DNA of 64,000 bases from Haliotis rubra (taxonomy: Eukaryota). Shown in pieces: positions 25,188 to 45,450 of this stretch. The stretch is from the NCBI RefSeq assembly GCF_003918875.1, contig NW_025765461.1:62001-126000 (forward strand), given 5' to 3'. Position 1 is the first letter of the stretch, and the number at the start of each line of letters is the position of its first letter. Below the pieces are notes generated by a model. The model was not told the origin of the DNA. It searched no databases and was given only the letters and a program-made list of their open reading frames with translations. Position numbers and translations under genes: made by a program.

Positions 25188-25384
25188 AACTGTATATCAT
25201 CATGATTTTACATGTTTTTGTCTCACGATACGACTAAATTACAGTGACACGACTAAATTACAGTGACACACGTTAACATCCAGATCAGTGCCTTACCGAT
25301 GTAACACACTACAGTGGTACGGTGTAATATTAAGCACTGAAATGTGTGTTTTTCATAAGATTGAATATAAGACTATTTGCAGCC

Positions 25385-26030: not shown

Positions 26031-26169
26031 AGGTATCCCTAACTGGAATATGCGTTTTTTTCGAAAGGGTCTGTGAATATATCTCTATTTCTGATAAGAG
26101 AAGCCACACAGGGTTCACGGTTTTCTGGTGTCCTTGACCCCGATGGGATGAAGAAGCGGGTATTTCCTA

Positions 26170-27723
26170 CTATGAGGTTTCAATCTTCTTCTTGTGAGTC
26201 GCCATCCAGCCGCTATGCTTGATGGTCACGACATCGCAGTCCCCGGGAGTCAACGGCTTGTGACGGTCCGCAGCTGACAAGATGGAAACATATTTATACA
26301 CGTTTCGAAAAAACCAATGTCTACACCAATGGCTATTATGTTGGTTCAGTGTTCATATATTTTGCTCTTCTTGAGTGAGTGAGTGAGTGGGTGAGTGTTA
26401 GTGGGTGAGTGTGTGGGATGAAACTGGATTAAATCAATGGTCGATCATCTGCGCATCAATTCCTAGTTTTGGATTACCATGACAAGGATTTTCTTTGAGG
26501 GTCCCTTGGACTCATACTCTGAATTTTCAGGGGTCCTGGACAACAAAATGGGGGTCCCAGACACTTAAATAGCATTATTAATACAATGTTGTAATAGTGT
26601 TGCAATTCGGTTACTGTTATTGTATTGTGTATCATGATCATGACATTGTTACAGTAATTAAAATGCAAATGATACCATAACCCGGCTAGGAGCAAACTCA
26701 GTGATAACGTATTGTGACATGATTGAAATTTTACTAAAAGTACTTAGACATTTTTTTAAAGAGACCTAACAAAATACTCATCAGTATTAAGAATTTGAGA
26801 ATTTCAAACTAGGAAAACAAAAGCTTGGCTCGCCGGAGGGTATTGTTTGAAACATTACATGTTATCCTTTTAGAAAATACATTATAAAGACGAGTTACAT
26901 TTTATGTCAGTGTGCCCTATGTACAATGTTTTCACACACAAATATTTTTCAAATACCATTTTTTAAAAACAAATGTACACTCTCTCAGAACATTACTGCA
27001 AACTTCTATATCTTTATTATTGTCATGTTCTTGACTCAGGGAACCCATGCAAAACGTTTTGTGGTAGACGCATACGGTACTGTTATGTGCGATATAGTTC
27101 TAAGATGTCATCCGTCCATGGCAACACTTACCTTTCTTTCTGGAGCCGGAAGCAGTTGGCAGCAGGACAGATCTGATCATGTGACAGTATCGTGACCGGA
27201 AGTTTCCGAATGTCTGTCGTTCAAAGATCCGTGGCGACTTGTGGCGACAGTGGGTGACGATCTGGTTGTCAGGTCCTCTCTGTTCGCAGACAAACACCCG
27301 GGGCCTGCCGTCACACCCAGGGGGGACGTACACGACGACCGTGTCTCCTAGCAGTATGTTCGTGGGGAGTTTGTCATCTAAGTATATATATACAATGTTG
27401 TTGTGCCCGAGTTGTACAATAGTTGTATTGCTAAGGCTAGCATTGGAGTCTTTCTTTTGAATAAAGGAAATTGTGTTTCTATTGTGCCCGATTTGTACAA
27501 TGCGCAGTATATCGATTTGAGGACGATTACAGAGACGCATCTTACAGCTGTCTGGCTTTTGGTCAGATTGTAAAGACTGGTTGGCATGTTTCATCTTTCC
27601 TTTTCTACCTTTCTCTGAAAGACATGTATTTTGGTCATTCATATGCTGAGAACTGTACTCTAATTGTTTGTTTGGCTCGAAGCCAGACGGTGCGACGTGG
27701 TGCGCCCCCCTAGCTTCAGACAT
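26170..27723 (-). CDS. Tandem-RHIM protein, copy 1 (join 27723-27132, 26273-26170; about 231 aa)
   Basis: IVQIGHNRN (VQIG 27498-27487) and LSNTTIVQLGHNNIVYI (VQLG 27417-27406); acceptor catcacag before 27777; donor AAG|gtaagt at 27132/27131; acceptor cttgtcag before 26273; all sites conserved in copy 2. Confidence 0.75.
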
Positions 27724-28202
27724 TGCCCCGGAGTTTGAACAGATCCCTGGTTCGTATGTCACCACTCGCCGTTGTCTCTGTGATGAAATGTAGAAAGAAT
27801 TATATCAGCTTTACAAAGACAAATCTTAAAACGATTTCATGGAATAGTAACTTATATTGCATACCAAAGGTCTTGCGAAGGACATCCAATACTCTGATTG
27901 AAGTAAGTCACTCTATAATTGTTAGAAATCTACGTACATTTTTACCCTTAATATAAACGGACACACGTAATTTGACCTGTATAAATTACATGTTAAAAAG
28001 GCAGCAACCAGGACAGACAGGAGTTCACTTCATCAGCTGTTTGCTGCAGCCTTTGCAGTGGGTCAATCTATAGTATTGATGTATGCCGTAATGCTATATG
28101 TGTATGCATACGAGGGTGTATGAGAGTTGCCGTGTCTTCGCATGTGTTTGTGACGAGTGCCAGGATACGCTGGAAAACGCCATATGCCAACACAGTTTGA
28201 TA

Positions 28203-28365
28203 GTGAGTGAGTTTAGTTTTACGCCGCTTTTAGCAGTATTCCAGCAATATCACGGCGGGGGAACACAAGAAAAGAGCTTCACTCATTGTACTCGAACCCG
28301 GGTAGGGAGTCGAACCTAGGTCTTCGGCGTGAACGCTTTAACCAACAGGTTACCCCACCGCCCCC
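28203..28365 (-). mobile_element. SINE family A in intron 1 of the RHIM gene
   Basis: TSD-like tttgatagtga on both sides. Confidence 0.85.
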
Positions 28366-28409
28366 AATTTGATAGTGAATCACTGTCAAATGCCTTTGTT
28401 ATGGTCGTA

Positions 28410-28822
28410 AGGTGGGCGGTGGGCGAGCTGGCTAAGGCGCCAGGCTAGTGATCCAGCGAGGTTGAGGTGCCGGGATCGAGCCCACCTGTGAGCGGGTGTA
28501 AAAACCTTGGAGTCAACTTTGTGTGCAGACTCTTTCCGTGTTGTCACAACCCCTAGTGTACAGTACACAACCCTGTGCACTTAAAAGAACCCACCAATCC
28601 GTTGGTATATGACCAGATGGTGGCCACATCAAGATGAGAAAGCCACAATAACTCGGTGCGCCTAGTGGCAGCAAGAGTTGTATACTCCCCAGGAGATGAG
28701 ATTGATAATACGATGTACCGTTGAGATTGACATCCAATGATCGAGGGAAAAATACCAGTGCCTTGAGCATGCTCTAGTTGCGTGGATATGTGCGCTATAT
28801 AAATATACTATACTATAATAAT
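28410..28822 (+). mobile_element. tRNA-derived SINE, probably Nin-domain type
   Basis: tRNA-like head; gagtcaactttgtgtgcagactct..gcacttaaaagaaccc core (family from recall); gcgctatataaat plus short-repeat tail; absent from the duplicate. Confidence 0.65.
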
Positions 28823-28916
28823 ATAACTGAGATATTGAAACACTTGTCGGTAACTTTCATGACGGAATTCAGTCTTGGACAAGCTAGGAAAGTAAAGTGA
28901 AGAAAGTGACACTTAC

Positions 28917-29115
28917 CTGTCCTGCCTACCACAGAGCCTGGTCGAAACAACGTTAGCTGCAAACCCCTCTCTGAATAAAACACCACGAATTAAGGGTGAC
29001 TGTCAGCTCTTATATACTGTCCTGTTTCAAATAGCTACGTCATTGTTAAGCAATCAGCTAGGTGCATTCCGAGGTGTGCATGTTACCGTGCAGGCTTGTA
29101 TAATGTCACGTGATG
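28917..29115 (-). promoter_or_regulatory. Promoter and non-coding exon 1 of the RHIM gene
   Basis: Minus-strand TATATAA 29016-29010; donor acag|gtaagt at 28917/28916; equivalents in copy 2 at about 57810-57906. Confidence 0.6.
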
Positions 29116-29299
29116 CTATCTGCCTCAAGTTTCGTAGGGGCCGGCAATTCAACATGGAGATATTATCGTGATTCCTCACGTGTCATTGTCAACCATCCAT
29201 TCATACTTTACCAACCATGACTAGTGACAATCAATAAATAATGCAGATCGGTGTAGATTGCTGTAGATCGGTGTTGATTTAACATATGGGTCATTGATA

Positions 29300-29870
29300 T
29301 GCATGAAACTCATTAATATGCAAATGAATGCATGACGTCATAGGTCGGCGAGGTTAATGAATCGTAGATATATGTTGATTGGCTCATCCAAATCCCGTGA
29401 CCTTAGTGAAGGCATGAAAAACCCATGAATATGCAAAATGAATGCCGGACGTCATAGGTCAGCGAGGTGGTGAACGAATCAGAGCTATGACGACGACGAC
29501 AAGATAAGAAAACTCGTGAATATGCAAATGAATGCTATATATAGTCACAGGTCAGCGTGGTTAATGAATCGTAGATATGACGACAGTAAGGTAAGAAAAC
29601 TCATAATATATATTCAAATGAATTGCCGTATGTAATAGGTCGGCGAGGTTAATGAATCGTAGCTATGACGACAGACAATGTGGTAAGAAAATAAACATGG
29701 ATATGCAAATGTATCTTCAGATCCTGATAAGGTGTCCCATAGGGGTCCTCCAATCCTCCTTTTGCCGGATCAACCCGGATCAGACGTTGATTGGCTCATC
29801 CAAGTCACGTGATCGTAATAAGGCATGAAAACACATGAATATGCACATGAATGCATGACGTCATAGCAAA
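29300..29870. promoter_or_regulatory. Degenerate repeats carrying octamer (ATGCAAAT) and CRE (TGACGTCA) motifs
   Basis: aatatgcaaatgaatg..gacgtcataggtc.gcgagg recurs about 5 times; perfect CRE at about 29333 and 29856. Confidence 0.55.
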
Positions 29871-30566
29871 GCCGCAGTATACGAAGCAGATTTTTGTTTA
29901 ATTGTGAATCATTTGCAGCGCAGAAAGCCTCCGGAACCACACTGAAAGTTCCTTCCTTATTTCTCTTCAATATCTTAAAGAATATAATACTATGTTATGA
30001 GAGTGTGTGTTTTGTAATTTGTAATAACACATTGATTAAGTTATAATTAAACAACCTTCAATCAGTATATGTGTTCTCGCCGTGAATGTTAAGACTCTGG
30101 TGAGTTAATATTTTATATTTGTGACCCAATATTTTAGATTTGTGACTCAATTGCATTGTACTAGAAATCTATATTGCCATTCTTTGTAGCTTGCTGATTG
30201 TTGTTCAATATATTATTGAATATTTTAGACTTGTCTTTGTTGTATTTTGCTGGTTCAAAGGGGACTCTTAAACCTTTTGTCACGGCAAATTATTAACCGT
30301 AACAGCTATCATGTACGTGACCATCGAAGAGAAGCAATTCTTGGAAATTCAGGTATGTCAAGGTCCCTGATAAGCTCTCTTTATCACAAGAGCGTAGTTG
30401 TTCCTTTGCCACTCAGTGGCGTATACAGATGAATCGTGGTTTAACACATACATCGCTCTAGAGGCGCTATGGCAAACAAAATCTACCTATTTCAGCTAGC
30501 GACCTCAGCTTCTGCATTATTTTTACCTGTGAGCACCGACCTAATTTCTCCCAGCTATCTACTCCA

Positions 30567-30605
<39 letters not shown>

Positions 30606-30874
30606 TTGAAAGTACTTAAATGCCACCCGAGCGGACGGGCTTGTGTCACAACGGTTTGGGGGCTGTTGAATGTACAATCTTATGTCCGCGAGAAACATCC
30701 TCAAGAACACCACCCCTAAATAACAGAGAGTCATTCCAGCCTCAACAACCAGCGACACAACATTAACTTCGAGTTCTATTCGGGACACACGCGTTTGTTT
30801 AACCATGCAGTGAAGCGATAAAACGTTTACCGTATGTATTACATTATAGGTAAGAGTAGATGTATTGTACATTT

Positions 30875-31804
30875 TTATATTTTGAAGTCCCATAAGAGTA
30901 GTTTGCTTGTGTTGCCTATATATCCGATTTTCTTGGCGAACTGGTCCGTCAGCAGGTCGGGTTCGGACTGTGCTGTTGCTCTCCCGTTGTCATCATTTAT
31001 GAGGTTGACATGCAGTCGATCCTTGTCTTTCGTGCTAAGTTTCAGATCGATGGTGAGTTGTCCAAAGGGTTTTTCGGCTGCTTTTTCATACATGGCCATA
31101 AAGTGATCCATGTTTTCGGGGAAAGTTCTCCAGGCAAAAACTTTGATTTGATGTTTATCTATGGGCGAATGAAATAAGCTGACATAATGAGCGTTCAAAG
31201 CAATGTCTCTCGAAACAGGGTTTGTAGTAGAAGAAAGATCAGTACATTTTTGTGATGGGAGGTTTGAATGAACAGCCGTGAAATACACTTGTCATACTTT
31301 GCTTCGGCCAGGAAATCATCCAACACCAAGACGTTCCGTTGACGAGCATCAAAGTAATCCCCGTCCAATATATCGTAGGGAATTCCTTTCACAAACGTCA
31401 CATGAGGCAGCTGTTCGCGGATGTGTTGATATAATGGCCATGTCGTATCAGATGAAAGGTAAACACAGACTTTCCACAGCCACTGGCTCCCACCACGAGC
31501 ACATTGGAGGGAATCAGGAATTTGAATCGTTCTCGAACATCCGACGTACTGGGTAAATGAGGCAGCGACGAGTGGACTTGCGGCGGCGGAGATAGTGGGT
31601 TGACTTGTAACGGCAGGTGGACTTGCGGCGGAGGAGATAGTTGGTATACTTGTAACGGCGGGTGGACTTGCGGCGGTGGTGGCTGGACTTGTGGCGGCGG
31701 CGGAGAAGGGTGTAACTGAGATGTCTTATGTTATGTATATTTCTTCTGTGTCGTAACATGACATCTCTCCTTGAAAATATTTTCTCACAGGTGGCATCCC
31801 CCAT
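30875..31804 (-). pseudogene. Polinton/Maverick/adintovirus-type A32-like packaging ATPase with upstream C2H2 finger; frameshifted
   Basis: Walker A GASGCGKS 31490-31467; Walker B VLVLDD; LF..SHHKN; IALNAHY..LF.SP.D..QI; PFGQLTIDL; zinc-finger-like CEKIFSRRDVMLRHRRNIH. Confidence 0.85.
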
Positions 31805-31991
31805 GGTGATCTAATACGGTATGCAATTAGAAGGTCTGAAGCTTTCTTTTATACCCTTCACCCATGCGATAGTTTAAGGCTGCTTGTTGACGCTTCAAGA
31901 CAGCTAGTTCCCGTTCCACCACAGCCCTCATCTCCGACGCATGTTGTATTTTCACAGGCTGTATATTCAGTACAGTCTTTTGGTCCTTCTT

Positions 31992-32351
31992 CTAAGGTGC
32001 AACCTGTCTCTTCTTCTTCTAAGGTGCAACCTGTCTCTTATTCTTCTTCTTAGGTGCAACCTGTCTCTTCTTATTCATAGGTGCAACCTGTCTCTTCTTA
32101 ATCTTAGGTGCAACCTGTCTCTTCTTAATCTTAGGTGCAACCTGTCTCTTCTTATTCTTAGGTGCAACCTGTCTCTTCTTATTCTTAGGTGCAACCTGTC
32201 TCTTCTTCTGCGGCTTCCTGTTTGGTGCCCTTGTTTTCTTCAAGGGTGGTTTTCTCGACTTTGACTTGGTCTTGTTAAACTTGGCTAAAATGTCTCTAGG
32301 TATATCATCTAGAACTCTCTTTACGTTGAAAGAGGACGTCTTATCCGTCAT
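31992..32351 (-). repeat. 27-bp repeat encoding a basic KKRQVAPKx array; probably part of the viral/Polinton remnant
   Basis: ORF 32019-32351; about 8 units of aggtgcaacctgtctcttctt. Confidence 0.6.
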
Positions 32352-33955
32352 GTGGCATGAGTGAAACTGTCAGTCGCCCATCTTGCACTTTCCTGTGACA
32401 TGCACAGGAGGGAATCTGGAAACACACTTTCTTCTTCACGGCACACATGTCGGTATGTGTTAGAAAATGGTGGTACGTGTATTTTGAGTTCCTCTTACAG
32501 TAAACACAGGTAAATAAAGCCTGGCCATCTTAACTGTTGGCGTCAACTGGTAGCAGGCCGAGGCATGTGTCACAGAGGTAGGACATCTTGTACTGAACTG
32601 TGGAGTAGCTCTCAATCCGACGTCTCAACGGTAACCATTAGCATGCTCTATAGAAACCTATGGAAGTCACAATACTGTACTAAATACACAGTCAACATGC
32701 ATACAGAGCTATTGACATGTTATATCGGATTATATATGCGTTGACAAGACGTCAAAGTGATGACTGCCACACCTTGAATGATTCGGCTTGGCGAGGCCAC
32801 TCAGGTCATCGTGGGATAATGACGCGTGTATTTAGGGGAAACAGTTGGGAACATCTGGTCCATACTGGTAGTTCGAACCCTGATTCGATTACGATCATTG
32901 GTTAGTTTGTCGACACCATGCATGTGGTCACGAGGTTCACTAAAACAGGCAACCGACAGTGACTAAATGGCAGCTGATTCGTGAAGCTGATATGCCGCCA
33001 TGTTTGTCAAATTCTGTTATGACGTTTTAGATTCCAAATGACGGCATCTATTCGCCACTGAAACAGAATCCAGACTTTGTTGTGCATTACTCCGTTCATC
33101 ATATGGAGAGATCCTTAAATACACATCTAAATATTATCATACACATATAATACACAGAAAGGCTTTCTTTTCGACTGTTTTATTGTGAGGTACACAGTAT
33201 AAAGGGTTACACTATGCAGTTCGTTGACAAGCTGATAACAGTACATGCTTAAAATTGGCATGACAAATACTTGCTAAACATCTAGAAGTATCTACAAAAT
33301 TCCTCTTTGAGGATACGGAATCTGTTCCGGTGCTAAATAATGTGTTATTTAACAACAGGAATACAATGTACTGCACACGCAGTGATTTAGCCGATGCGGC
33401 TTACACTTGTATTCCATACAGGAATATGTTAACCCACCCACCCTGACCCACAAGAGCCACCCAACCCACTCCCCCACTCCCTCGTCCCCACCCCGGCGTG
33501 CGCAGAATTGATGCCGGGAACGTGTGACAGTTGTTTCAGTTGAAATAGGACACATTGATTTTGTTTAATATTATAAAAATAAAATTTAGAGTGAATTCTG
33601 TCCTTCTGAAAATATATTTCCGAGATTCATGTTTAACTGGGTGATCTAACGTATTTGTAAACTATATTTGCAAGTTTAACATTTCATTGGAAGATATCCA
33701 GGCAAAATGTTGAACTTGAAAATGTGGTTTACAAATACGTAGATCACTTAGTTGAACATAAATCTCATAAATATTTTTTCGGAAGGTATGAATTCAATCT
33801 GAATTCTATTTTCATAATATTACTTGCAAAATCTACGTGTCGTATTCCTATTTCAAGTAAACAACTGTTTTACACATTTCCGGCATATAACACACTCTTG
33901 AATTGTTATACACCCTCCTGCGCACGCGTATTTTGCAGCAAATGTTCGGATTGAA

Positions 33956-36900
33956 TTAATGCTGCATGAACATCATCACGATCAGGACCACCAGGATCTC
34001 GATTTGAACTAAAACGTGGAACCAAATCGTGAGATTTTCTTTGACCTTCTGATCTTGGCAGTGTGGCCTCAAGTAGCGTCTCACAGACTTGGTTTGACGT
34101 GTGACCTTGGCCACCTCCCCAACAGTCTGTGTATGTCGCGTGACCTTGGCCACCTCACCGAGAGTCTGTGAACGTCGCGTGACCTTGGACACCTCACCGA
34201 GAGTCTGTGAACGTCGCGTGACCTTGGCCACCTCACCAACCGTCTCTGTATTTCGCGTGACCTTGGCCACCTCACCAACAGTCTGCGTACATCTTGTGGC
34301 TACCTTCCGTGACCTTGACCGAAGCTTCCTACTTCTTCCAACACGTCTTGGCATTACTGAAACAATAATCAACAGAGGACCTTTAGGCTATCTAAATCAC
34401 CTGACTTTGTTTATAATTGCATTAAAACCTAATTCTGAGTAATTACAATTCTACCATGTATGACCCTTTCCATCAACACAATGTCATTCATGGGAGATGT
34501 TGAGTAAAGAAACATCCAGAGATTCAAACAAGCAGATTTACACAATTTCAAAATTGTGAAGTCATTTTTAGCGAAACGCATTTCTTGTATATCAAAAGGA
34601 GAAAAGCATATGTACTATCTGAAATATATGGGTCTAGATGAACAGATATTCTATTCAACAGGTTATTTCCGTCAACATTATAAAATATTAACACTCTGAA
34701 CATCTGTTGTCGCGCTAATGACATGTATCATATAAAGAGAATGGATCTACAGTTAACGCATACGGTAAATCATAACGAAAATACCTACCAATCAGATTCT
34801 TGACATGTACTGTTTGATGTACTATGATGTTGGAATGGCCGTTCTGCACATTGGTAACATCTGCAACGATGTCCACCATCAGGTTCTGTCCATCTCCATC
34901 AACAGCATCTGTTCTGTGTCTGTCGCCATCATCTACGCTCAGTCTTTGTCCTCTTTCGCTGTCCTGTCTTTTCGTAATTCTTTCTCTTTTGATGTAATCT
35001 CCTGTCCACATTCTGCCACCATCAACGTATTGTGGCTGCGCTGTTTTGACAGTGCCATCTACTTCTCTTCCTTCAGTACAACGATCTCCTCTCCTTTTTT
35101 CTTCATTGCTATCACATTTTCCCTGCATTCCCAACACAGCACCATCTCCGAGTCCTAACTCTATTCCTGCACAAACGTCATCGTTTCCTTTATCAATTTC
35201 TTCAGTGTTGTAATGGTATTTCTTCCATATTTTACCACCGCCATCACCACAATCGCCCTGTTTTTCACCAACAGAGCCATCTCTGAACCGTCTTTCTCTT
35301 CCTCCACCGACAACAGCGCCTCCTCCACCTCCAAGGATGTACTCATCTCTCTCCCATCTGGCTCCAAACCTCTCATATTCTCCCTGCTTTCCATCAACAG
35401 TGAGATTTTTGTCTCGTCTTTTTCTTCCTCCACGAAGAACAGTTCTGTCTCCACCTCCAGTCATATACTGCAATCTCTCCCACCTTCCTCCCTGATTTCC
35501 ATCAACAACGTCTTCTCCTCCACTTTCGTCATCAATGTCTCCTCTATCTCTATCTCCACCTCCAAAAGTATTTTGATCTCTCCTCCATTTTCTTCCACCA
35601 CCAAAACAATTTCCACGCTCCTCTCCAAAAGCCTTGTCTATTTTCCTTTTTTCAGCTGAACCAGCACCCCGACCCCTGTCCACCTCAGTTTCCACCACAC
35701 CTGCACACCGACTTCTTTCCTTCTCAGTATCGGAGACACCAGAGCCCTGACCTGTTTCCTTCTCAGTTTCCAGGACACCAGTACGCTGACCTCTTTCCTT
35801 CCTCTCGTACTCTCCCTGCTCTCCACCCACAGAGCCATTTCTGCCTCTTCTTTCTCTTCCTCCACCGACAATAGCGCCTCCTCCACCTCCAAGGATGTAC
35901 TCATCTCTCCCCCATCTTCCTCCAAACCTCTCATATTCTCCCTGCTTTCCATCAACAGTGAGATCTTTGTCTCGTCTTTTTCTTCCTCCACGAAGAACAG
36001 TTCTATCTCCACCTGCAGTCACATAGTGCAATCTCTCCCAACTTCCTCCCTGCTTGCCATCAACAACGTCTTCTCCTCCACTTTCGTCTTCAATGTCTCC
36101 TCTATCTCCACCTCCAATGGTACTTTGATCTCTCCTCCATTTTCTTCCACCACCAAAACATTCTCCCTCCTCCTCTCCAAAAGCCTTGTATATTTTCCTT
36201 TTACCAGCTGAACCAGCACGCTGACCTCTGTCCACCTTAGTCTCCACGACACCAGCACACCGACTTCTTTCTTTCTCAGTATCGGAGACACCAGCACGCC
36301 GACTTATTTCCTTCTCAGTATCGGAGACACCAGCAGCCTGACCTCTCTTCTTCTCAGTTTCGGAGACATCATCACCCCGACCTCTTTCCTTCTCAGTTTC
36401 GGAGACACCAGAACCCCGACCTCTTTCCTTCTCAGTATCCAAGACACCAGCACCTTGACCTTTTTCCGTCTCAGTTTCGGAGACACCAGCATACCGACCT
36501 CTTTCCTTCTCAGTTTCGGAGACACCAGCCCCCCGACCTCTGTCCTCAGTTTTCGAGACACCAGCATCCTGACCTCTTTGTTTCTCAGTTTCGGAGACAT
36601 GAGCACCCCGACTTCTTTCCTTTTCAGTTTCGGAGACACCAGAACCCCGACCTCTTTCCTCCTCAGGTTCGGAGACACCAGCACCTTGACCTATTTCCGT
36701 CTCAGTTTTGGAGACACCAGCATACCGACCTCTTTCCTTCTCAGTTTCGGAGACACCAGCCCCCCGACCTCTGTCCACAGTTTTCGAGACACCAGCATCC
36801 TCACCTCTTTCCTTCTCAGTTTTGGAGGCATGAGCACCCCCACTTCTTTCCTTCTCAGTTTCGGAGACACCAGCACCCGGACCTCTGTCCATCTCAATAT

Positions 36901-37030
36901 CCGAGACACCTTTATTCCTGCCGCAGATGGCACCAGGCTGTAGTAGCTTTGTACCATCTCTTACAGGTGTAGCATTCCTTCTCTCTCCACTCCTATTATG
37001 TCTTTGTCTGTCACCAAAACACCGTCGCAT
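33956..37030 (-). CDS. Predicted 880-aa spliced protein (join 37030-34789, 34356-33956): charged/Gly repeats, RHIM-like motif, TQT array, hydrophobic C-terminus. Unspliced, it reads as a 771-aa ORF and a 132-aa ORF.
   Basis: 2.3-kb ORF; acceptor ttttggtttcag 6 nt before the ATG; donor TTG|gtaggt at 34789 and acceptor attgtttcag before 34356 are phase-compatible; minus-strand AATAAA at about 33179-33184. Confidence 0.65.
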
Positions 37031-38153
37031 CTCTTTCTGAAACCAAAAGATGGTATTCTGAAACGTATTGCAATGATCTGCACTGTAATCTCGAATATTT
37101 TAGTTGTTTCTATATTCTAACATTCTGCATCCTCTATTCCCGTATACCTTCATCCTAAACCCCAATCGAGTGGTACCTGCTGTGTTAAAGAAGTATAGGC
37201 AAATACGGTAGAATAACCAACTAACAGTGAGTGAGTGAGTGAGTGAATTTTAGCATTTCAATCAGCAAACTCCAGTACAACCTCCACGAAATCCAGATCA
37301 GATAAACCGGTGATAGGAACCCGATAACGCGCCATCAGTCTAACATCACAATCATCACCGTGTTATCGAACGTTTATTGTATCAAAGGCCATAGGCCCAC
37401 ATTCATGAAGTGCATATGCGTCAATATTTTCACAAAGATTCGCATTTCATTTCTGCTCTTGAAGAAATATTTGAAGCATAACATAACAAATCTTAAATCT
37501 TGATAGTTTGTGGTTACCATGGGCATATGCATTGTTGTGCTGACGGTCAAATTGAATGTTTATTTGGTATGTATTGCTGTCGAACGTTAAAGATAGACAT
37601 ATAGAGTGAAATGGTACAGATCTTCGAAACTGTTTAACTTACATGTACATACTATTTCAGACTTTGCAAGTTTATGAGGTCTCCTTGTATCAATATTTAG
37701 CCTTGTACATCCTCGAGCACGAGCAAGGTCGTTTGCAAATATACACAAGGTCGAATCTATTACATATTTCCCTGCTTCAATGCAAATCTTTAAACGTGCA
37801 TGTCTAGTGCTATGGGCTAATATATTTGTCCATTCTTGGGTGTACGTATATCTTAATCTGGTTTGAAAAATGTTAAGCTAGCTATACATCCAACGTCTGG
37901 GTAGACCCAAATATGACCAGGACCTGAACTAAATAAAATATGTCTAACATTACTTGCTCAATTTAGTCTACCTACTGAATCAACTGAATAAAGATTAACC
38001 AACGTTCTGTAGCCTTATCAGCTCTCCGTGACACCACCAGTGGAGTACATTACACAACAGGTACACGGCGTTTTCACTCAGTCTCAGTCAGAGATAAACA
38101 AAGAGACGTGTGTACCAGTAAGTATTAATTGTACAGAAATTATTTTGACTCAC

Positions 38154-38310
38154 CCAGGAAACACAAATTACTAAAAATGCCAGACATGTCGGTGACAACA
38201 CTGCAGTCAGTGCATTAAAATACAACGCGTTCAATGCCCTGCCTGTTTAAAGTCTGAAGTACACGTAGATGGTACATAGATATAGAGTATACGTTATAGG
38301 TATTATAAAG
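38154..38310 (-). promoter_or_regulatory. Putative non-coding exon 1 and promoter of the 37030 gene
   Basis: Donor cctgg|gtgagt at 38154/38153; TA-rich motifs at about 38245 and 38303. Confidence 0.35.
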
Positions 38311-41300
38311 CTATAATCCAGTCTAAACGTCAACTCAAACATCTCTCACTCCTTCCATCGTACCTTCGGAATTCCAGTGTATTTTCACACATTTGTATTT
38401 TCAGAAACAACTACATTTTATTTAATTTGAAAAAATATACAGACAGAATATTTCGTTTTATTTAATATTCAGTCAGTATGTACATGATATACAAGTGGAA
38501 TAATATACTTTTTCGTATTTTCAATAAAATACATTCGAGGTCCTATGACGCATATGATTCCGCGAATAGCCTCTGAAAAGTTTCCTATTTTCGCTTTCGC
38601 TCTTTAGTGTCGTGTTATTGATCAAAAGTTTTACTGTAAATAGGAAGGAGACAACCCGTCCATAATCATAATTTACGACAAAATCTGATTGTATTGTACG
38701 ATTCCGACCGAACCTCTGAAAAAGCCCACAATCCCAAGTCAGTGCATGCAACAAACATGGCCGTCCTGTCAGTCTATTGTAAATGCATGTAGGACCATGT
38801 CCTTTACAGTGCTTCTAAACAATGTTTTAACGAAATACACCCATTATCGATTTACACACATTCTTCTATGTCCGTCAGTGGGCAAAAATGCTCTGTGAAA
38901 TATTGATACATGTACTAACCTTGTTTGGACTTGAAAGTATATGCGGCTGCGAGCATAGAATTGTCACCAGAGCTATGACGTGTTCATATGCACTGCGCAT
39001 GCGCAGGGCGAGCTCTGTTGCTGACTGTTATGCAATACTACTAGACTTACGCTTTGTCTCTGAAAATACATAATTTTGATAGAAATACCTTCCAAGCTCA
39101 GGGGCAATACATCGAGTTTATTTCTTTGCGTAATTTGATAGACCTCCAGACATAAATACTTGCTTGGTGGTTAAGGTGGAGTTTAATAACATAAGTGAAC
39201 AGGTCGTTCGGGTGAAAAATACCACACAGCCCAAGACTGACCTAAAATACTATAAACACCACAGGCACCATAATCACAGCATGTCTCAAAATAATAACAG
39301 AGCTGTGAGTCAAAATGAAAAAAAACAAGATAAAATAATGTGTCATGAGGCTGAGTATTATTATATTTAAATACAAAAAAACGAGGGCAGGGACGGAGGG
39401 AGGGTGATTAAGAAAATTATATAAGTTGGGAATAAAAAAGAAAGCTGCACATGCATGACAGGAAAGGAGAGGACGCATGCGTGGTAGTGAACAAGACAGA
39501 CAGTTCCGGTTTATATGCAAATTAGACATCATGACACATGATTTTGCAATTTGCTAGACCTCCATATACACAGTTAAGAAGATAACAAACACTTGTTTGG
39601 TGGTTTAGGTGGAGTTTAATACGATAGGTAAACACGTCGTTTAGGTGAAAAATATCACACAGACCAAGACTGACCTAAAATACTATAAACACCACAGACA
39701 CCAAGGCAAAGCCCGCCAAACAGGAGAGAGAATAAAAAAACCCAAACTGAACAGTAAAAATGTCTACAAAACATCACTTCACCACTTGTGATATTAACCA
39801 TATAACTGTAGGCAGAAACTAACATTGAAGGGGAAACTAGATTGTAGACTAAGGAAATCGCCACCGACAGATCCCAAAAGGTAACACACTTGAAAGATCG
39901 AGCACCATTCTGTCCATATATCTATTTCTCAAAACAGGTTGAAAAGTAAAAATGTGAAACATAACATCTAAACCAAAATGAAGCCACGTTGAAAATATAA
40001 GTTCAAACAGCTACGCAGATCCATCATTACAAGAAAAAACATTTTCTGATGAGCAGTCGTTAAAAATTAAATTAAAAGGTTTTTCAGCCTGAAAGAAAAC
40101 CAAGGAAATACAAAAACTGGAAATGGGTGAATATAGATGTGACAAGTTAAGAATAAAAATTCGAGTGACGACATGGGAAGGTACTGTACACTGACTGTTC
40201 GAAGTATTCCCCAGCCCGGAGGCCCAGCGCCGGTTGTTATTGTATCAGGCCGGAAGTTTCACATATGTGCAGGCCCTTGTGGCCTTCAGTAAATTATGTC
40301 ATTTTGTTTTTCAACTGGAATTTTTCCCATAATTGTTCTCTTTATTAACGTTCGTGAATCCTCCATAATCCACCATGTTACGATAACTTACAGTTTCACT
40401 TCCTGGCTTTGTGCATAGAAAAGTCAACACCAGCCTTTAACAAATAAAAACCTCTCTCTGCGCCATAGGCTTCGCAAACTGATTTTGTAGAAACAGTGAG
40501 AAAAAGTGTACAGTGTAGTATAGTTTGATTTTATTGATTTGACTTTAACAAAATGGGCCTGGAGATTTCGCCCTTTGCCTGTAGATTTTATAGCCTGCAT
40601 TTTACAACCCAAAAGTACTAGAATCTGAACTTTACTAAGAAAGTGTAATCCCAAATAGAACATATGTTACATTTGACCACTTTCTAAAATGGGCCTGGAG
40701 ATTTCACCATGGGCCTGGAGATTTTATAGCCTGCATTTTACAACCCAAAAGTACTAGAATCAGGTACTTTACTAAGAAAGTGTAATCCCAAATAGAACAT
40801 ATGTTACATTTGACCACTTTCTAAAATGGGCCTGGAGATTTCACCATGGGCCTGGAGATTTTATAGCCTGCAGGCGGCAGCAGGCCATGAAGGCCATAGG
40901 GAAAATTTAAGCACCGCAAACACTGCATTCACCAAGTTATTTAAATGTTTTTGCCATTCTGGCAGAAACTCGGGACAGAATGAGTGGTGAGTGTTTGACA
41001 TATCCCTTTTTAGACGACGATGGCCAAAAGACGATTGCACAAAAGCCACTGTAGCTGCATCCAGCAAAGCACCACTCTTTCTCAAGCTGTGGAACGAGTA
41101 TAATTGAGAGTCAAGGCTACATTTGTGTAGAAGGCTGTTAAACTTTTGATCCCAATTGCTGTCGAGACCAAGGACGTAGCTGCCCCTTGTAGCACTGAAC
41201 GAAGGCTGGATCAGAAGGTCTGGCTAGTATGGCACTCACCATACAACAATAAGCACGCACAGGGCAGCATAATGAATGAGGCATTCTTTTTATAGGCACA

Positions 41301-41559
41301 TATTTCACTGATCAACGTGACTGTAGAGATTTAATCCATTAATCCGAATGGTCAATCCTGACACACCCAAATAAATGCCATCTCTTGTAAACTGTTTAGA
41401 ATGGTCAACAAGCTTCCAGTTGACCCAACGAAGTGTGATTTTATGAGCAGAGCAAAAGATGCAAGTAAAATGATCGCCCATAGGGATAAACCTTCATTGT
41501 TGTGATGATCAATATGATAGAACATGGCTTCCAAGTGCCAAGGCCATACAGGTAGGCGA

Positions 41560-44500
41560 CATTGTTTAAGTTGTACATACGCTTTCAGACTTTGCAATTT
41601 TATGTCTGAATATCAATAGTTAGCTTTGTACTTACAACCCGAGCAAAGTCGGTTGCAAATGTACACAAGATTGAATCTATTACATATTTCTCTGCTTCAA
41701 GGCTATTCATAATGTTCTAGATGCTAATATATTTGTCCATTCTTGGGTGTACGTATATTTAAATCTGGTCTGACAAATGCTAAGAAAGCTCGGTATACAT
41801 CCGGCGTCTTGGTAGACCCAAACATGACTAGGACCTTGACTAAATAAAATATGTGTAACATTTACTTGCTCAGTTCAGTCTACCTACTGAATCAACTGAA
41901 TAAAGATTAAGCAACGTTCTGTAGCCTTATCAGCGCACCGTGACACCACCAGTGGTGTACATTACACAACAGGTACACGGCGTTTTCACTCAGTCTCAGT
42001 CAGAGATAACACAAAGACGTGTATACCTATACCAATGAATTGTACAGCAATCATACTGACTCACTGAGGAAACAAAACACAGTAACCCCTCATTCTACCA
42101 TGGCTACGTGAAATGCTCGAATTTGATTGGTCAAGCCATAAAATAAGACGGTATCAATTTGGATTGAAAATGCGTCTGATTTCACGGCGTTTCACTGCTC
42201 ACGCATACAACACTGCCGCACTACTTCAGCTTGGCCACCAACATGACTAATATCAACACAACAGACGTGATGGAAATGCTGATGAAACATTTATTAAAAC
42301 TCGAAAAATACAATTATACGATTTCTCCTCCACAATTATTAGGGGACCTCACTATCATAATTATTACCTCCTATTATAAAAATATTCAAAAACAATTACA
42401 ATACACAGCCCCAAACATACACAAACATATAAATCAGAAAACCTTGTAAAAATACATCCATATCTATCCCTATTTGTGCGGCAAACGTTCGTAAACATTT
42501 ACCTACTTGGTAAATGGTATATTTGTTTCCGTTTAGAATGGGAAATTCGCAAGACAACGGTCAGGCGAAACACAAAATTCGCCACTCATACTCCATCATG
42601 TCCCGTTGCATCGTTCAAAATGTCAAAAACTGAACCATGTAAATTCAGTTCTCTGCCACCTTCCCCGAAGGCTGTCACTGCTATGTTCGTACACTTTGAA
42701 AAGCTTGGCCACAATCCAGTCCCAAATGATGAGAACAATGTTCCAAGGAATCCCAGGTCAGTCGCATGTACACAAAGCTGCACTGTCACTCTTCCTTGCA
42801 TGCCGGGGTGGAGGTACGTACGTGAAATCATGATCGACACCCGCCGGTCATTAAAATCAACAGTCTTTGATGAGTTACAGGTTATAGGTCGATCAGAAGA
42901 GGATCTATTCTTCGATTCTGCAGGTCTCAGGTTCGACAGTCAGTCAAGTATTTTCCACTGTCACGTCGAATTTCAACCTTTCGCAAAATGTAAACACTGG
43001 CTCGTCCGCCATTTCAAACTGTTGCGTAACTGTCTACTTCCAAGAAAATAAGTAGGTCAGACGATTCCATTATAGTGTGGCCAGGGGGATACAGTAATAC
43101 GGCACACAAAACAATAGGCTGGTTTCGGTCTTGTAGAGTTATGATTATAAAAACCAAGCTCTTAGGTGTTACATTATTGCATTGAATAAATAGTAGTTTG
43201 TTTTCTTTTGACCGAATATTTTTTATGTTGCAATGTTAAAAAAAATTAGAACGGAACCTACCACTCCTTTATCAGACGAGTTCAATTCGTCTCTCATCCC
43301 ATGCCGGATTACGCAGTGTCTTCCGCAGGGCGAGGAAGTTCGATGTTAAATCGGTTATGGTAGAATGGAGATAAACATACTGTGTTTGGAAATTAGATGA
43401 ATGTTAGACCGAATTGATAGTCTCTAAATTAATCATTTGAAACCTCACGCTACGCGTTCGGCTTCAAATAAAATTTAGAGACTATCGATTCGGTCTAACA
43501 TTCATCTAATTTCCAAACACAGTACGTTTATCTCCTAATTTTACCATGAATCAAGAAAATACTAGATTCTGATTGGTTGTTCAGAAAAATCAGACGGCAT
43601 CAATTGTGGATTGACGCTCATCTGATTGTAAGGCCGCTTCACCGCGCATTAACAAATCTTATTGTGAGAACTACTTCCGTTTGACCACAATGATGGCGGA
43701 TCATAACAACAACTCCATGGATTTTGACGCTGACTTTCGAATTTTCCACACAGGCAATTGGAAATTTTTGGATTAAAAATGCGTTTGATTTCATTGCGCT
43801 TCACTGCGCACGTATAGAACACTGCCGCACTACTTCAGTTTGACCACCAACATGACTAATATCAACACAACAGACGTGATGGAAATGCTGATAAAACATT
43901 TATTTAAACTCGAAAAATACAGTTATATGATTTCCCCCCCAACAATTATGAGGGAACCTCACTATCATATTACCTTCTATTATAAATATTCAAACTCAAT
44001 TACAATACACAGCCCCAAACATAAACAAAACAATATCTAACATATAAATCAGAAAGCCTTGTAAAAATACATCCCTATTTATACAAAATATGCAGCAAAA
44101 CATTTTTAGTAAACTTTTACCTACCTGGTAAATGGTATATTTAATTCCGTTTAGAATGGGAAATTTGCAAGATAGATCTAACGGTCTGGCGAAACACCAC
44201 ATTTATGCCACTCATAGTCATACTCCATCATATCCCGTTGCATCGTTCACAAAATAATTCTGCTCTCTGCCAGTTTCCCCGCAAGGTTGTCACTGTTATT
44301 TTCATCTACTTTGAAAAACGCTTGGACACAGCCCAGTCCCAAACGATTAATACAAAGTTCCAAGGAATCACAAGTTAGTCGCATGTACAATAAGCAGCAG
44401 TACTGTCACTCTTTTGTCGCATGCCGGAGTGGAGGCAGTACGTGAAATCATGATCGGCCGGTCATAAAAATCAACAGTCTTTGATAAGTTACAGGTCGTA

Positions 44501-45450
44501 GGTTGATCAGGAAAGGATCTATTCTTCGATTCTGCAGGGTTCAGATTCAACAGTCAGTCAAGTATTGTCCACTGTCACTTCAAATTTCAACCTTTCGCAA
44601 AATGTAAACAACACTGGCTCGTCCGCCATTTCAAACTGTTGCGTAACTGTCTACTTCCAAGAAAATACGTAGGTCAGACGATTCCATTATAGTGTGGCCA
44701 GGGGGGTACAGTTTCACGGCACACAAAACAATAGGCTGGTTTTAGTCGTGTGGAGTTGGTATTACTCGGGTATTACCTAATTGCATTGAATAAACAGTAG
44801 TTTGATTTCTTTGGACAGAATATTGTTATGTTGTAATGTTAAAAAAATACGAACAGCATCTACCACTCCCTTCACAGACGAGTTCAATTCGCCTCTCGTC
44901 CCATGCCGGATTACGCAGTGTCTTCCGCAGAGCGAGGAAGTTTGATTTTAAATGGGTCATGGTAGAATGGAGATAACCCTAGTGTGTTTATCTCCTAAGT
45001 GGCCCCTCAGTTTTCACGCCTTGTTAACAACCCTTCCCAGAGTGGCCCCTGAACCCTTAGGTATTAGGAAGGTGACAACCCATCCATAATCATACTGGAT
45101 GGCAAAAGCTGATTGTCTTGTACGGTTCCGTCTGATCCTCTGAAACAGTGCACAATCCCATGTTTCTGCATGCAACAAACATGGCCGACTTTCCAGTCTA
45201 TTGTAAATGCATGTAGGATAACGTCCTTTACTGTGCCTCAAATCAATGTTTAACGAAACACACACATAAACGATTTACACACATTGTTAGTCGTTAGTAG
45301 TCAAAAATACGCTATGAAATATTCGTACTAACCTTATTTGAGACTTGAAAGTATGCGCGATTGTAAGCATAGAATTGTCACCAGGCCTATGACGTGACCA
45401 TTTGCAAGGCGCATGTGTAAAGTTGTTCTGTTGCTGACAGTGTATAAGGG
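41560..45450 (+). repeat. Diverged duplicate of about 37630-39030, interrupted by two palindrome-ended elements
   Basis: 41560-42080 matches 37630-38165; 45060-45450 matches 38620-39030. Confidence 0.8.
42091..44998. mobile_element. Two head-to-tail copies of a 1.45-kb non-autonomous element (42091-43538, 43539-44998)
   Basis: Copies are homologous; short IR cattctaccat/atggtagaatg; terminal palindrome 43368-43537, reduced in copy 2. Confidence 0.7.

What the first reader, a model, noticed from the sequence alone, without database searches (positions are those of the whole stretch)
33956..37030. Two track ORFs splice into one 880-aa repeat + RHIM-like + TQT-array + hydrophobic-tail protein
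Seen: the donor TTG|gtaggt at 34789 (phase 1) joins in frame to the acceptor before 34356 (G+TA ATG). The product has about 700 aa of Gly/charged repeats, the motif VADVTNVQNGHSNIIVH, an Arg-rich stretch, 13-aa TQT repeats and a terminal hydrophobic run (LTIWFHVLVQIEILVVLIVMMF). The exon plan matches the neighbouring RHIM gene: ATG near the acceptor, RHIM in the large exon, phase-1 intron, basic last exon. Inference: a possibly tail-anchored, disordered scaffold for amyloid-type signalling, conceptually like MAVS or TRIF. I do not recognise this architecture.
Basis: partly seen in the sequence, partly recalled or inferred. Interest (0 to 1): 0.75.

Follow-up and report, generated by a model that had tools for sequence, protein, structure and literature searches.

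The report
Abalone-only disordered repeat protein, membrane tail
This is a real, spliced and transcribed abalone-only gene whose 880-codon reading frame encodes a mostly disordered repeat protein with a membrane-anchoring tail, but its "RHIM" motif fails the tests for that family and a close relative carries a broken copy.

Summary
The donor TTG|GTAGGT (exon ends at 34789) and the acceptor AG|TAATG (exon starts at 34356) join in phase 1. That exact joint, with GT..AG ends, is present in contigs of two transcript-like runs from two studies. It is also present in the only database relative, Haliotis rubra XP_046572512.1 (176 aa). A 5' exon ending at 38920 also exists, so the gene has at least three exons.

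The 880-codon frame is not chance: 0 of 5000 shuffles of its non-repeated 1020 nt gave a stop-free frame. The product is as described:
- 17 copies of a 13-aa Gly/charged repeat
- two 184-aa units
- one uncharged, beta-prone stretch (VTNVQNGHSNIIVHQTVHV)
- a basic region with five 13-aa T/S-Q-T repeats
- a C-terminal hydrophobic helix (Kyte-Doolittle hydropathy, 19-residue window, 2.47; AlphaFold pLDDT above 90)

The motif reads VQNG, outside the RHIM tetrad, and gets no Pfam RHIM hit even at E of 10 or less. No known domain or fold was found.

The H. rubra orthologue, 95-97% identical, has two nonsense codons and two 1-nt insertions in the long frame. dN/dS is 0.6 for exon 2 (not significant) and about 1.1 for exon 3.

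I read it as a young, fast-evolving gene restricted to this abalone lineage, probably tail-anchored. A signalling role is unproven. The scan had already noted the neighbouring RHIM-like gene family.

The parts
38920..38963 (-). Exon 1 (minimum extent; 5' end not mapped), most likely 5' UTR. Donor is AAG|GTTAGT at 38920/38919.
   Evidence: The loose end of an X8 contig at 37038 (table 7) matches 38922-38951 exactly. The donor was read. The in-frame ATG at 39000 is not kept as an ORF in H. rubra or in the 45.3-kb copy.
37037..38919 (-). Intron 1 (GT at 38919-38918, AG at 38038-37037 read as 37038-37037)
34789..37036 (-). Exon 2; coding from ATG 37030 (747 codons plus 1 nt)
   Evidence: ORF. Transcript-like contigs of X8 and X1 lie across it and stop at 37038. 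The frame is stop-free beyond chance.
36212..36910 (-). 39-bp minisatellite: about 17 copies of the 13-aa repeat GAGVSETEKERGR (with a 231-bp super-period)
   Evidence: Copy number differs in H. rubra.
35253..36353 (-). Two tandem 184-aa units (35811-36353 and 35253-35801), Gly/Arg/Asp/Glu-rich with aromatic residues and GGR/RGG-type runs. H. rubra has a single hybrid unit.
34802..34870 (-). RHIM-like, uncharged, beta-prone segment IVADVTNVQNGHSNIIVHQTVHV (VQNG = 34849-34838)
   Evidence: It is the top beta-propensity window and the longest charge-free run (19 aa) of the 747 aa. It is identical in H. rubra. There is no RHIM profile hit.
34357..34788 (-). Intron 2, phase 1, GT..AG, 432 nt
   Evidence: Joint seen in X8 and X1 contigs. 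The same junction is in XP_046572512.1. A low-depth X8 contig at 34400-34581 (4.5 against 27.5) shows some unspliced RNA.
33956..34356 (-). Coding part of exon 3 (132 codons plus stop TAA 33958-33956); net charge +19
34101..34290 (-). 39-bp repeat, 4.9 copies: 13-aa units with anchors TQT, TET, SQT, SQT, TQT
   Evidence: There are 6 copies in XP_046572512.1 and 8 in the L001 assembly.
33968..34036 (-). C-terminal hydrophobic helix LTIWFHVLVQIEILVVLIVMMFM, followed by only QH (predicted tail anchor)
   Evidence: Kyte-Doolittle hydropathy over 19 residues peaks at 2.47. AlphaFold helix 145-175 of the H. rubra protein has pLDDT 93-97. One substitution separates it from H. rubra.
33179..33955 (-). 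3' UTR down to the first minus-strand AATAAA (33184-33179)
   Evidence: X8 contigs at 33635-34159 and 33300-33379; AATAAA; similarity to H. rubra falls off below about 33300.

Best explanation
This is a real, transcribed gene of at least three exons, found only in a narrow abalone (Haliotis) lineage. In this genome it carries an intact 880-codon frame.

Shown:
- The exon structure and the splice.
- The non-random open frame.
- The repeat anatomy.
- The lack of any known domain or any relative outside abalone.

Inferred: the protein is an intrinsically disordered, highly charged chain built from expanding and contracting minisatellites. These are 17 copies of a 13-aa repeat and 2 copies of a 184-aa unit. 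Its last roughly 160 residues are the working end. They hold one uncharged, beta-prone 19-26-residue segment, then a strongly basic region with five 13-residue T/S-Q-T repeats, then a C-terminal transmembrane helix.

The helix would insert after translation (tail anchor) and leave the rest in the cytosol. Given its high hydrophobicity and non-basic C-terminus, the membrane is more likely the ER than mitochondria.

The most likely mode of action is a membrane-tethered, multivalent, self-associating scaffold. The beta-prone segment could mediate homotypic or heterotypic assembly, possibly with the RHIM-like small proteins encoded 7 kb away. The T/S-Q-T array could bind a dimeric hub such as dynein light chain LC8. 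Both steps are untested.

The gene is young and weakly constrained. Repeat numbers differ between close relatives, and the H. rubra assembly carries a disrupted long frame. The large N-terminal part is therefore dispensable or polymorphic for loss.
For: - Splice and expression: the joint 34356/34789 lies in contigs of X8 and X1, two studies. These runs cover 33300-37067 only, and a 5' exon is joined at 37038.
- Independent confirmation of the junction: NCBI protein XP_046572512.1 of H. rubra reads ...HVKNLT|VMPRRVG....
- Coding frame: 0 stops in 340 non-repeated codons against 10 and 26 in the other frames, and 0 of 5000 shuffles stop-free. Even the broken H. rubra copy has only 2 stops in that frame against 8 and 24 in the others, so the frame was open in the common ancestor.
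- Synonymous differences are enriched only in the annotated frame. Between the two internal units pS is 0.14 and pN 0.08. Between species dN/dS is 0.62, against 0.85-1.1 off-frame.
- Disorder: G 20%, R 13%, E 11%, D 8%. Mean pLDDT is 34.6 for the last 340 aa of exon 2 and below 50 for residues 1-138 of the H. rubra protein. No Pfam family matches.
- Tail anchor: hydropathy 2.47, a confident C-terminal helix, only 2-3 residues after it, and a hydrophilic N-terminus. The exon-1 ATG is not conserved as an ORF.
- The beta-prone segment is the top-scoring window and the longest charge-free run.
- The intact allele is the one transcribed at 35002: X8 contig 34931-35062 has 0 differences from the window where H. 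rubra L001 has 8.
- Genomic setting: the gene lies beside an LRR-Ig gene and an abalone-only RHIM-like gene, and the order is the same in H. rubra.
Against: - No evidence of translation.
- Constraint is not demonstrable. dN/dS of 0.62 in exon 2 has p = 0.19. In exon 3 there are 14 non-synonymous against 4 synonymous changes, a ratio of about 1.15. Exons are no better conserved than intron 2 or the 3' UTR, all at 93-99%.
- In the H. rubra assembly the long frame carries four lesions: a 1-nt insertion 18 nt after the ATG, a 1-nt insertion in the 39-bp array, CAG>TAG and GGA>TGA.
- A 2-nt deletion at 36073-36075 stands in about half the depth of DNA runs X5/X6 (table 4). This may be a frameshift allele.
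- The AlphaFold runs used single sequences, so low confidence is weak evidence of disorder.
- Neither run that shows the joint is on record as RNA (X1 'RNA?', X8 '?'). Their transcript nature is inferred from coverage and from the spliced joint itself.
Confidence: 0.5

Rival explanations
1. Only the short C-terminal product matters. This would be a tail-anchored protein of about 162-176 aa starting at the conserved Met in ...NLMVDIVADV..., as NCBI annotates in H. rubra. The long repeat-rich frame upstream would be a leader that is open in this genome but not needed. The short protein would come from an internal transcription start or internal initiation.
For: - The only annotated relative is exactly this 176-aa protein.
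- All four H. rubra lesions lie upstream of that Met, and everything after it is intact.
- The Met and the following 26 residues are identical in both.
- The last 210 nt of exon 2 show the lowest divergence of the exon.
Against: - The upstream frame is far too open to be chance, in both genomes.
- RNA contigs cover all of exon 2 and join it to a 5' exon. Ribosomes scanning this mRNA would meet ATG 37030 and many others first.
- No internal start was seen (table 6: none), although contigs cannot show one.
- Exon 3 itself shows no purifying selection.
Confidence: 0.2
2. A decaying or non-functional locus. The gene, perhaps recently born from minisatellite expansion, would now be drifting: still transcribed, with an ORF that happens to be intact in this haplotype, and with no product that selection sees.
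For: - dN/dS is not distinguishable from 1.
- Exon and intron divergence are equal.
- H. rubra carries four disabling lesions.
- A possible 2-nt deletion allele exists.
- Repeat copy number varies: 5, 6 or 8 TQT units and 1 or 2 large units.
- No relative exists outside this lineage.
Against: - An 880-codon frame has zero stops where about 17 or more per 340 codons are expected.
- Splice sites, the C-terminal helix and the beta-prone segment are conserved.
- At only 3-5% divergence the test has little power to detect constraint.
- The transcribed allele in run X8 is the intact one at 35002.
Confidence: 0.17
3. One reading: a genuine RHIM amyloid-signalling adaptor, anchored on an organelle like MAVS. 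Its VQNG motif would nucleate hetero-amyloids with the neighbouring RHIM-like proteins to trigger an immune or cell-death response.
For: - The pattern [IVL]Q.G..N occurs in only 1.4% of composition-matched shuffles.
- BLASTP aligns VADVTNVQNGHSNII with LSNTTIVQLGHNNIV of the neighbouring gene (E = 0.033 for that single comparison).
- The motif is the most beta-prone and only long uncharged stretch.
- It fits the loose 'cryptic RHIM' VxxG of Drosophila (PMC13506858).
- Tail anchor is predicted, and the neighbours look immune-related.
Against: - The third tetrad residue is Asn, outside V/I/L/C.
- No Pfam RHIM hit at E <= 10 and no PDB sequence match.
- No kinase, TIR, CARD, death or Z-alpha domain.
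- The motif was found by eye, so the pattern statistic is post hoc.
- Weak or absent constraint, and a broken orthologue.
Confidence: 0.1

Closest known systems
Haliotis rubra XP_046572512.1, 'uncharacterized protein LOC124280577' (176 aa)
   Same: It is the orthologue of the C-terminal part. It has the same splice junction, an identical RHIM-like segment, the same Arg-rich start of exon 3, the same 13-aa T/S-Q-T repeats and the same hydrophobic tail. The locus is syntenic and 95-97% identical in DNA.
   Different: It is annotated from an internal Met only, because the long upstream frame holds two stop codons and two 1-nt insertions. It has 6 repeats (8 in the older assembly) against 5 here, and one 184-aa unit against two.
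RHIM proteins (RIPK1, RIPK3, TRIF, ZBP1, viral M45; Pfam PF12721)
   Same: A short, uncharged, beta-prone segment with V-Q-x-G-x-x-N followed by hydrophobic residues, set in a disordered region.
   Different: The tetrad is VQNG, not (V/I)-Q-(V/I/L/C)-G (PMC13506858). There is no profile match at all and none of the domains that accompany RHIMs.
Abalone-only small proteins with two RHIM-like motifs (neighbour at 27100-27765, paralogue at 56000-56593; earlier finding s1-344841)
   Same: Same gene cluster and strand, a phase-1 intron after the motif exon, and a motif resemblance of T-x-VQ-x-GH-x-NI.
   Different: No detectable homology outside those 15 residues. The neighbours have canonical VQIG/VQLG tetrads, no repeats and no hydrophobic tail.
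MAVS (tail-anchored innate-immune adaptor)
   Same: General layout: an assembly-prone element, a long disordered stretch and a C-terminal tail anchor (the layout is from established knowledge; the anchor is predicted here).
   Different: MAVS polymerises through a folded CARD at its N-terminus and recruits TRAFs. No CARD or other fold is present here, and the assembly-prone element lies near the membrane end.
Multivalent LC8 (DYNLL) clients such as ASCIZ/ATMIN, and tail-anchored Bim with its single LC8 site
   Same: Regularly spaced T/S-Q-T triads in a disordered basic region, 13 residues apart. This fits an 8-10-residue motif plus short linkers (motif definition from PMC12057147; array). Bim combining an LC8 site with a C-terminal membrane anchor is from my own knowledge.
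   Different: Only 2 of the 5 anchors here are TQT. The residues after the anchor (V/L-G-E) are not the usual acidic ones.
RGG/Gly-Arg-rich low-complexity domains (FUS, LAF-1, nucleolin-type GAR)
   Same: Composition: Gly 20%, Arg 13%, scattered aromatic residues, and 9 GGR, 2 RGG and 29 RG.
   Different: It is equally rich in Glu and Asp (net charge -3), has no RNA-binding domain, and would be tethered to a membrane.

Membership tests
RHIM (RIP homotypic interaction motif, PF12721) | Core tetrad (V/I)-Q-(V/I/L/C)-G | tested here: not met
   The sequence is V-Q-N-G (34849-34838). The strict pattern is absent from the real protein. The definition is from PMC13506858.
RHIM (RIP homotypic interaction motif, PF12721) | Match to the curated family profile (gathering score 20 bits) | tested here: not met
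   No hit at E <= 1 on exon 2. No hit at E <= 10 on a 44-aa cut-out, on the last 187 aa or on the H. rubra protein. Even the canonical-looking neighbour scores only 10 bits.
RHIM (RIP homotypic interaction motif, PF12721) | An 18-20-residue amyloid-prone segment in a disordered context | tested here: inconclusive
   It has the highest Chou-Fasman beta propensity and is the longest charge-free run (19 aa) of the 747 aa. These are crude scales, not an amyloid predictor.
RHIM (RIP homotypic interaction motif, PF12721) | Forms homo- or hetero-amyloid fibrils with other RHIMs | not testable with these tools
   Needs peptide fibrillation and co-assembly assays.
Tail-anchored membrane proteins | A single transmembrane segment at the extreme C-terminus | tested here: met
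   Kyte-Doolittle hydropathy over 19 residues is 2.47 at residues 108-130 of the 132-aa exon-3 product, with 2-3 residues after it. Exon 2 peaks at 1.02. AlphaFold helix 145-175 of 176 has pLDDT 93-97.
Tail-anchored membrane proteins | No N-terminal signal peptide | tested here: met
   The N-terminus from ATG 37030 is MRRCFGDRQRHNRSGERRN, which is hydrophilic. The mildly hydrophobic extension possible from ATG 39000 is not kept as an ORF in H. rubra or in the paralogous exon copy. The transcription start is not mapped.
Tail-anchored membrane proteins | Post-translational insertion with the N-terminus in the cytosol | not testable with these tools
   Needs localisation and protease-protection experiments.
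Multivalent LC8/DYNLL clients | Anchor triad T-Q-T (or a close variant) within an 8-10-residue motif in a disordered region | tested here: inconclusive
   The anchors are TQT, TET, SQT, SQT, TQT at 13-residue spacing. The region has pLDDT below 50. Motif definition from PMC12057147. Flanking preferences were not scored.
Multivalent LC8/DYNLL clients | Binding to LC8 dimers | not testable with these tools
   No complex prediction or assay is available here.
MAVS/TRIF-type adaptors | CARD or TIR assembly domain | tested here: not met
   No Pfam family on any exon and no confident fold.
Functional protein-coding gene | Open frame longer than chance, transcribed and spliced in frame | tested here: met
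Functional protein-coding gene | Purifying selection, and the frame kept in the nearest relative | tested here: inconclusive
   dN/dS is 0.62 (p = 0.19) in exon 2 and about 1.15 in exon 3. The H. rubra assembly has 2 nonsense codons and 2 single-base insertions. A run expresses the intact allele at 35002.

The most novel reading that the evidence does not exclude
A mollusc-specific, organelle-anchored assembly adaptor. The VQNG segment would be a divergent RHIM-type amyloid nucleator that pairs with the RHIM-like small proteins encoded next door. The juxtamembrane T/S-Q-T array would recruit LC8 dimers to zip two chains together and prime that nucleation. This would be an invertebrate counterpart of MAVS/TRIF signalling built from entirely different parts. 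Its variable and sometimes broken N-terminal repeats would reflect pathogen-driven turnover.
Probability: 0.08. Interest if true: 0.8.

Novelty: new variant of a known kind. Interest (0 to 1): 0.4.

Why it matters
If the protein is made, this is a lineage-restricted, minisatellite-built, membrane-tethered disordered protein sitting in a cluster of LRR-Ig and RHIM-like genes. It would be a tractable case of how new immune-type genes arise from repeat expansion and are lost again, since the alleles or species compared here include both intact and broken copies.

It also corrects the public annotation. H. rubra lists only a 176-aa fragment, whereas this genome holds a full 880-codon gene with a 5' exon.

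The amyloid-signalling idea would matter for the open question of whether RHIM-type signalling exists in molluscs. The tests possible here do not support calling this motif a RHIM.

Tried and rejected
1. Pfam on each exon and on cut-outs. Only sub-threshold noise on the repeats (Rpb5_C, ArnB_C), and no RHIM.
2. PDB sequence search with the motif region: nothing.
3. Word-index protein search with residues 560-747 of exon 2: no hit. The same search with the H. rubra protein found only itself.
4. Exhaustive phmmer with the last 487 aa of exon 2 found only the H. rubra 176-aa entry.
5. A paralogue of the coding region in the window: none, although the flanking LRR-Ig and RHIM-like genes are duplicated.
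6. Common origin of the two 39-bp repeat families (exon 2 against exon 3): 16 of 39 matches, no better than shuffles. Rejected.
7. Homology to the neighbouring RHIM-like gene beyond the motif: none.
8. An N-terminal extension or signal peptide from the exon-1 ATG at 39000. Rejected as unconserved.
9. AlphaFold on the H. rubra protein and on the last 340 aa of exon 2. No fold apart from the terminal helix, so no fold search was worthwhile.
10. Rfam on the window: nothing.
11. The bacterial-type promoter and terminator scan is irrelevant to an animal gene.
12. Literature: no paper mentions the locus or RHIMs in Haliotis proteins.
13. Not done: the 13-aa repeat region (residues 1-260) was not searched on its own. 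The joined exon-2 plus exon-3 protein of this window was not submitted anywhere.
Full report
**What is there**

The window is animal DNA. The only database relative of the gene is from Haliotis rubra.

On the minus strand a 771-codon ORF (37030-34715) and a 138-codon ORF (34372-33956) lie 340 nt apart.
- The large ORF meets TTG|GTAGGT, so the exon ends at 34789 after 2242 coding bases (phase 1).
- A pyrimidine-rich tract ends in AG at 34358-34357, so the next exon starts at 34356.
- G+TA makes Val and the frame runs on as MPRRVGRS... to the TAA at 33958-33956.
- The total is 747 + 1 + 132 = 880 codons.

**Is the splice real?**

Yes. Public runs were laid on 33300-38000.

- Runs X8 and X1 come from two studies. 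Neither is on record as RNA: X1 is listed as 'RNA?' (a guess) and X8 as '?'. They cover only 33300-37067.
- Both contain a contig that joins 34789 directly to 34356, skipping 432 nt with GT..AG ends on the gene's strand. In X8 the contig is 377 nt at depth 27.5, with 172 nt on the shorter side.
- I treat X8 and X1 as transcript data because of this coverage and the spliced joint. That is an inference.
- Runs X5 and X6 cover the intron and both flanks and hold the unspliced donor (contig 34659-34790). They behave as genomic DNA.
- A weak X8 contig inside the intron (34400-34581, depth 4.5) indicates a minority of unspliced RNA.
- An X8 contig also ends at 37038 in 42 foreign letters. Thirty of these match 38922-38951 exactly, just before a donor AAG|GTTAGT.

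The gene therefore has a further 5' exon, and exon 2 starts at 37036, six bases before the ATG.

That 5' exon contains an ATG at 39000 in frame with the main ORF. The ORF it would open is destroyed in H. rubra (deletions of 4, 4 and 1 nt, with a stop after 10 codons) and in a paralogous copy of the exon at about 45.3 kb. I take exon 1 as untranslated.

The first minus-strand AATAAA after the stop is at 33184-33179, where similarity to H. rubra also ends.

**Is the frame more than a by-product of repeats?**

The region is purine-rich on the coding strand. In the 39-bp array all three frames are open, so the array alone proves nothing.

In the 1020 non-repeated bases (34790-35809) the annotated frame has no stop, against 10 and 26 in the other two frames. 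None of 5000 dinucleotide shuffles produced a stop-free frame in any phase (mean best frame 16.9 stops).

Differences between the two internal 184-aa units are enriched at synonymous sites only in the annotated frame (pS 0.14 and pN 0.08, against ratios of 1 or more off-frame).

**Anatomy of the product**

- Residues 1-45 are unique and hydrophilic.
- Residues 46-260 are about 17 copies of GAGVSETEKERGR.
- Residues 259-626 are two copies of a 184-aa unit, 87-92% identical in DNA. The unit is rich in Gly, Arg, Asp and Glu, with Trp/Tyr/Phe and GGR-type runs.
- A unique stretch of about 170 aa ends in DIVADVTNVQNGHSNIIVHQTVHVKNLI.
- Exon 3 adds MPRRVGRSRKLRSRSRK, five 13-aa units with anchors TQT/TET/SQT/SQT/TQT, a basic linker and LTIWFHVLVQIEILVVLIVMMFMQH.
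- Exon 2 is 20% Gly, 13% Arg, 11% Glu and 8% Asp, with net charge -3. Exon 3 has net charge +19.

The hydrophobic end scores 2.47 on a 19-residue Kyte-Doolittle window, against a maximum of 1.02 anywhere in exon 2.

AlphaFold on the natural H. rubra protein gives one confident element, a helix over residues 145-175 of 176 (pLDDT 93-97), with everything else below 50. The last 340 aa of exon 2 give a mean pLDDT of 34.6. Both were single-sequence runs, so the disorder call is soft. It does agree with the composition and with the absence of any Pfam family.

**Relatives**

- A word-index search with the unique C-terminal part of exon 2 found nothing.
- An exhaustive phmmer of the last 487 aa of exon 2 against 1.84 billion representatives found one protein, P0001. 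This is XP_046572512.1, 'uncharacterized protein LOC124280577 [Haliotis rubra]', 176 aa.
- It starts at the Met of ...NLMVGIVADVTNVQNG... and crosses the same junction (HVKNLT|VMPRRVG). It carries six T/S-Q-T repeats and ends in the same tail.
- Searching with it found only itself.
- No paper mentions the locus.

**The H. rubra locus changes the picture**

Its contig (L001) is collinear with the window and 93-99% identical per 100 nt. Exons, intron 2 and the 3' UTR are all alike in this respect. The neighbouring RHIM-like gene follows in the same order.

The long frame is disrupted in four places:
- An extra A 18 nt after the ATG, giving a stop after 12 codons.
- An extra G inside one 39-bp unit.
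- CAG>TAG at the position of window 35494.
- GGA>TGA at the position of window 35002.

The two insertions sit in short homopolymers and could be assembly errors. The two substitutions are less likely to be. H. rubra also has a single 184-aa unit, a hybrid of this window's unit 1 start and unit 2 end. It has more 13-aa repeats in exon 2 and 6-8 in exon 3.

Two stops in about 330 codons are still far fewer than the 8 and 24 in its other frames. The frame was therefore open in the common ancestor and the lesions are recent.

The laid runs share H. rubra-type variants at 19 of 26 listed sites. However, the X8 contig 34931-35062 is identical to the window where L001 has eight differences, including the TGA. 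An intact allele at that site is therefore transcribed.

A 2-nt deletion at 36073-36075 stands at about half depth in DNA runs X5/X6 (table 4). It is either a frameshift allele or a mis-laid repeat unit, and I could not resolve which.

**Constraint**

Between window and H. rubra, dN/dS is 0.62 over 248 securely orthologous codons of exon 2 (10.5 synonymous against 23.5 non-synonymous changes, p = 0.19). The other two phases give 1.1 and 0.85.

In exon 3 there are 14 non-synonymous against 4 synonymous changes, a ratio of about 1.15.

At 3-5% divergence the power is low. No purifying selection can be shown, and strong constraint is unlikely.

**The RHIM question**

RHIMs are defined as 18-20-residue amyloid-prone segments with the tetrad (V/I)-Q-(V/I/L/C)-G (PMC13506858).

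- Here the tetrad is V-Q-N-G.
- Pfam's RHIM model gives no hit at E <= 10 on the exon, a 44-aa cut-out, the last 187 aa or the H. rubra protein.
- No PDB chain matches.

In its favour:
- The segment has the highest beta propensity and is the longest charge-free run (19 aa) of the 747 residues.
- The loose pattern [IVL]Q.G..N appears in only 1.4% of composition-matched shuffles, though this is a post-hoc pattern.
- BLASTP pairs it with the second motif of the neighbouring gene (7 of 15 identical, E = 0.033 for that single comparison).

It works like a candidate assembly segment, but it does not pass as a member of the RHIM family.

**The T/S-Q-T array**

LC8 binds 8-10-residue motifs anchored by Q flanked by Thr, in disordered chains (PMC12057147). 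Five anchors at 13-residue spacing in a disordered basic region fit that outline. Multivalent arrays are known from ASCIZ (PMC5963919, listed). Nothing here tests binding.

The two 39-bp repeat families of exons 2 and 3 are unrelated.

**Verdict**

| Question | Result |
|---|---|
| Observation | confirmed |
| Gene real, spliced as predicted | about 0.95 |
| 880-aa disordered, repeat-built, probably tail-anchored protein in this genome; the H. rubra assembly's copy is a recent loss-of-frame form | 0.5 |
| Only the short tail-anchored product matters | 0.2 |
| Drifting, non-functional locus | 0.17 |
| True RHIM adaptor | 0.1 |

It is an orphan with an unusual architecture and an interesting neighbourhood. 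Its function is unsupported by any test available here and its constraint is weak, so interest is moderate.

**Rule-bound omission**

Exons were searched by reference, and the junction was examined through the natural H. rubra protein.

Noticed in passing
window 21582-23003 / 51327-52129 and 27100-27765 / 56000-56593: Segmental duplication of an LRR-Ig-transmembrane gene and of the abalone-only RHIM-like small gene. The 880-codon gene has no second copy in the window.
   Followed up: partly
window 45280-45480 (-): An 80%-identical copy of this gene's exon 1 and promoter region, with the donor AAG|GTTAGT and a GCGCATGCGC-type palindrome kept. H. rubra has both copies (L001 5577-5689 and 2428-2540). 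It may be an alternative first exon or an orphaned promoter.
   Followed up: partly
window 36073-36075 and 37010: DNA-like runs X5/X6 show a 2-nt deletion at about half depth at 36073-36075, and a minor 1-nt deletion at 37010 close to the site of the H. rubra insertion. These are possible frameshift alleles or mis-laid repeat copies (table 4).
   Followed up: no
L001 7174-21042 (-), equivalent to the window + strand across about 24000-37800: The H. rubra annotation holds an LRR_8 gene model on the opposite strand whose span encloses both this gene and the RHIM-like neighbour. This is either a nested arrangement or an over-extended model.
   Followed up: no
window 10620-12056 (-), 1645-2626, 32019-32351 (-): Other long repeat-built ORFs: GGEPGADDRQVP units, 84-bp units, and KKRQVAPKN units. 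Several frames are open in each, the same minisatellite-with-ORF style as in this gene.
   Followed up: no
window 47267-47794 (+): A 175-aa ORF that looks to me like a Harbinger/PIF-type DDE transposase fragment. This is from memory only and was not scanned.
   Followed up: no
window 33300-33820 vs 59660-60209; 37625-38166 vs 41557-42077: Dispersed repeats, about 82% identical, flank the gene in the 3' UTR region and in intron 1.
   Followed up: no
window 35276-35494: An X1 contig that matches the window (1 difference where L001 has 9) ends exactly at 35494, the site of the H. rubra CAG>TAG. This may hint at a variant there in that sample.
   Followed up: no
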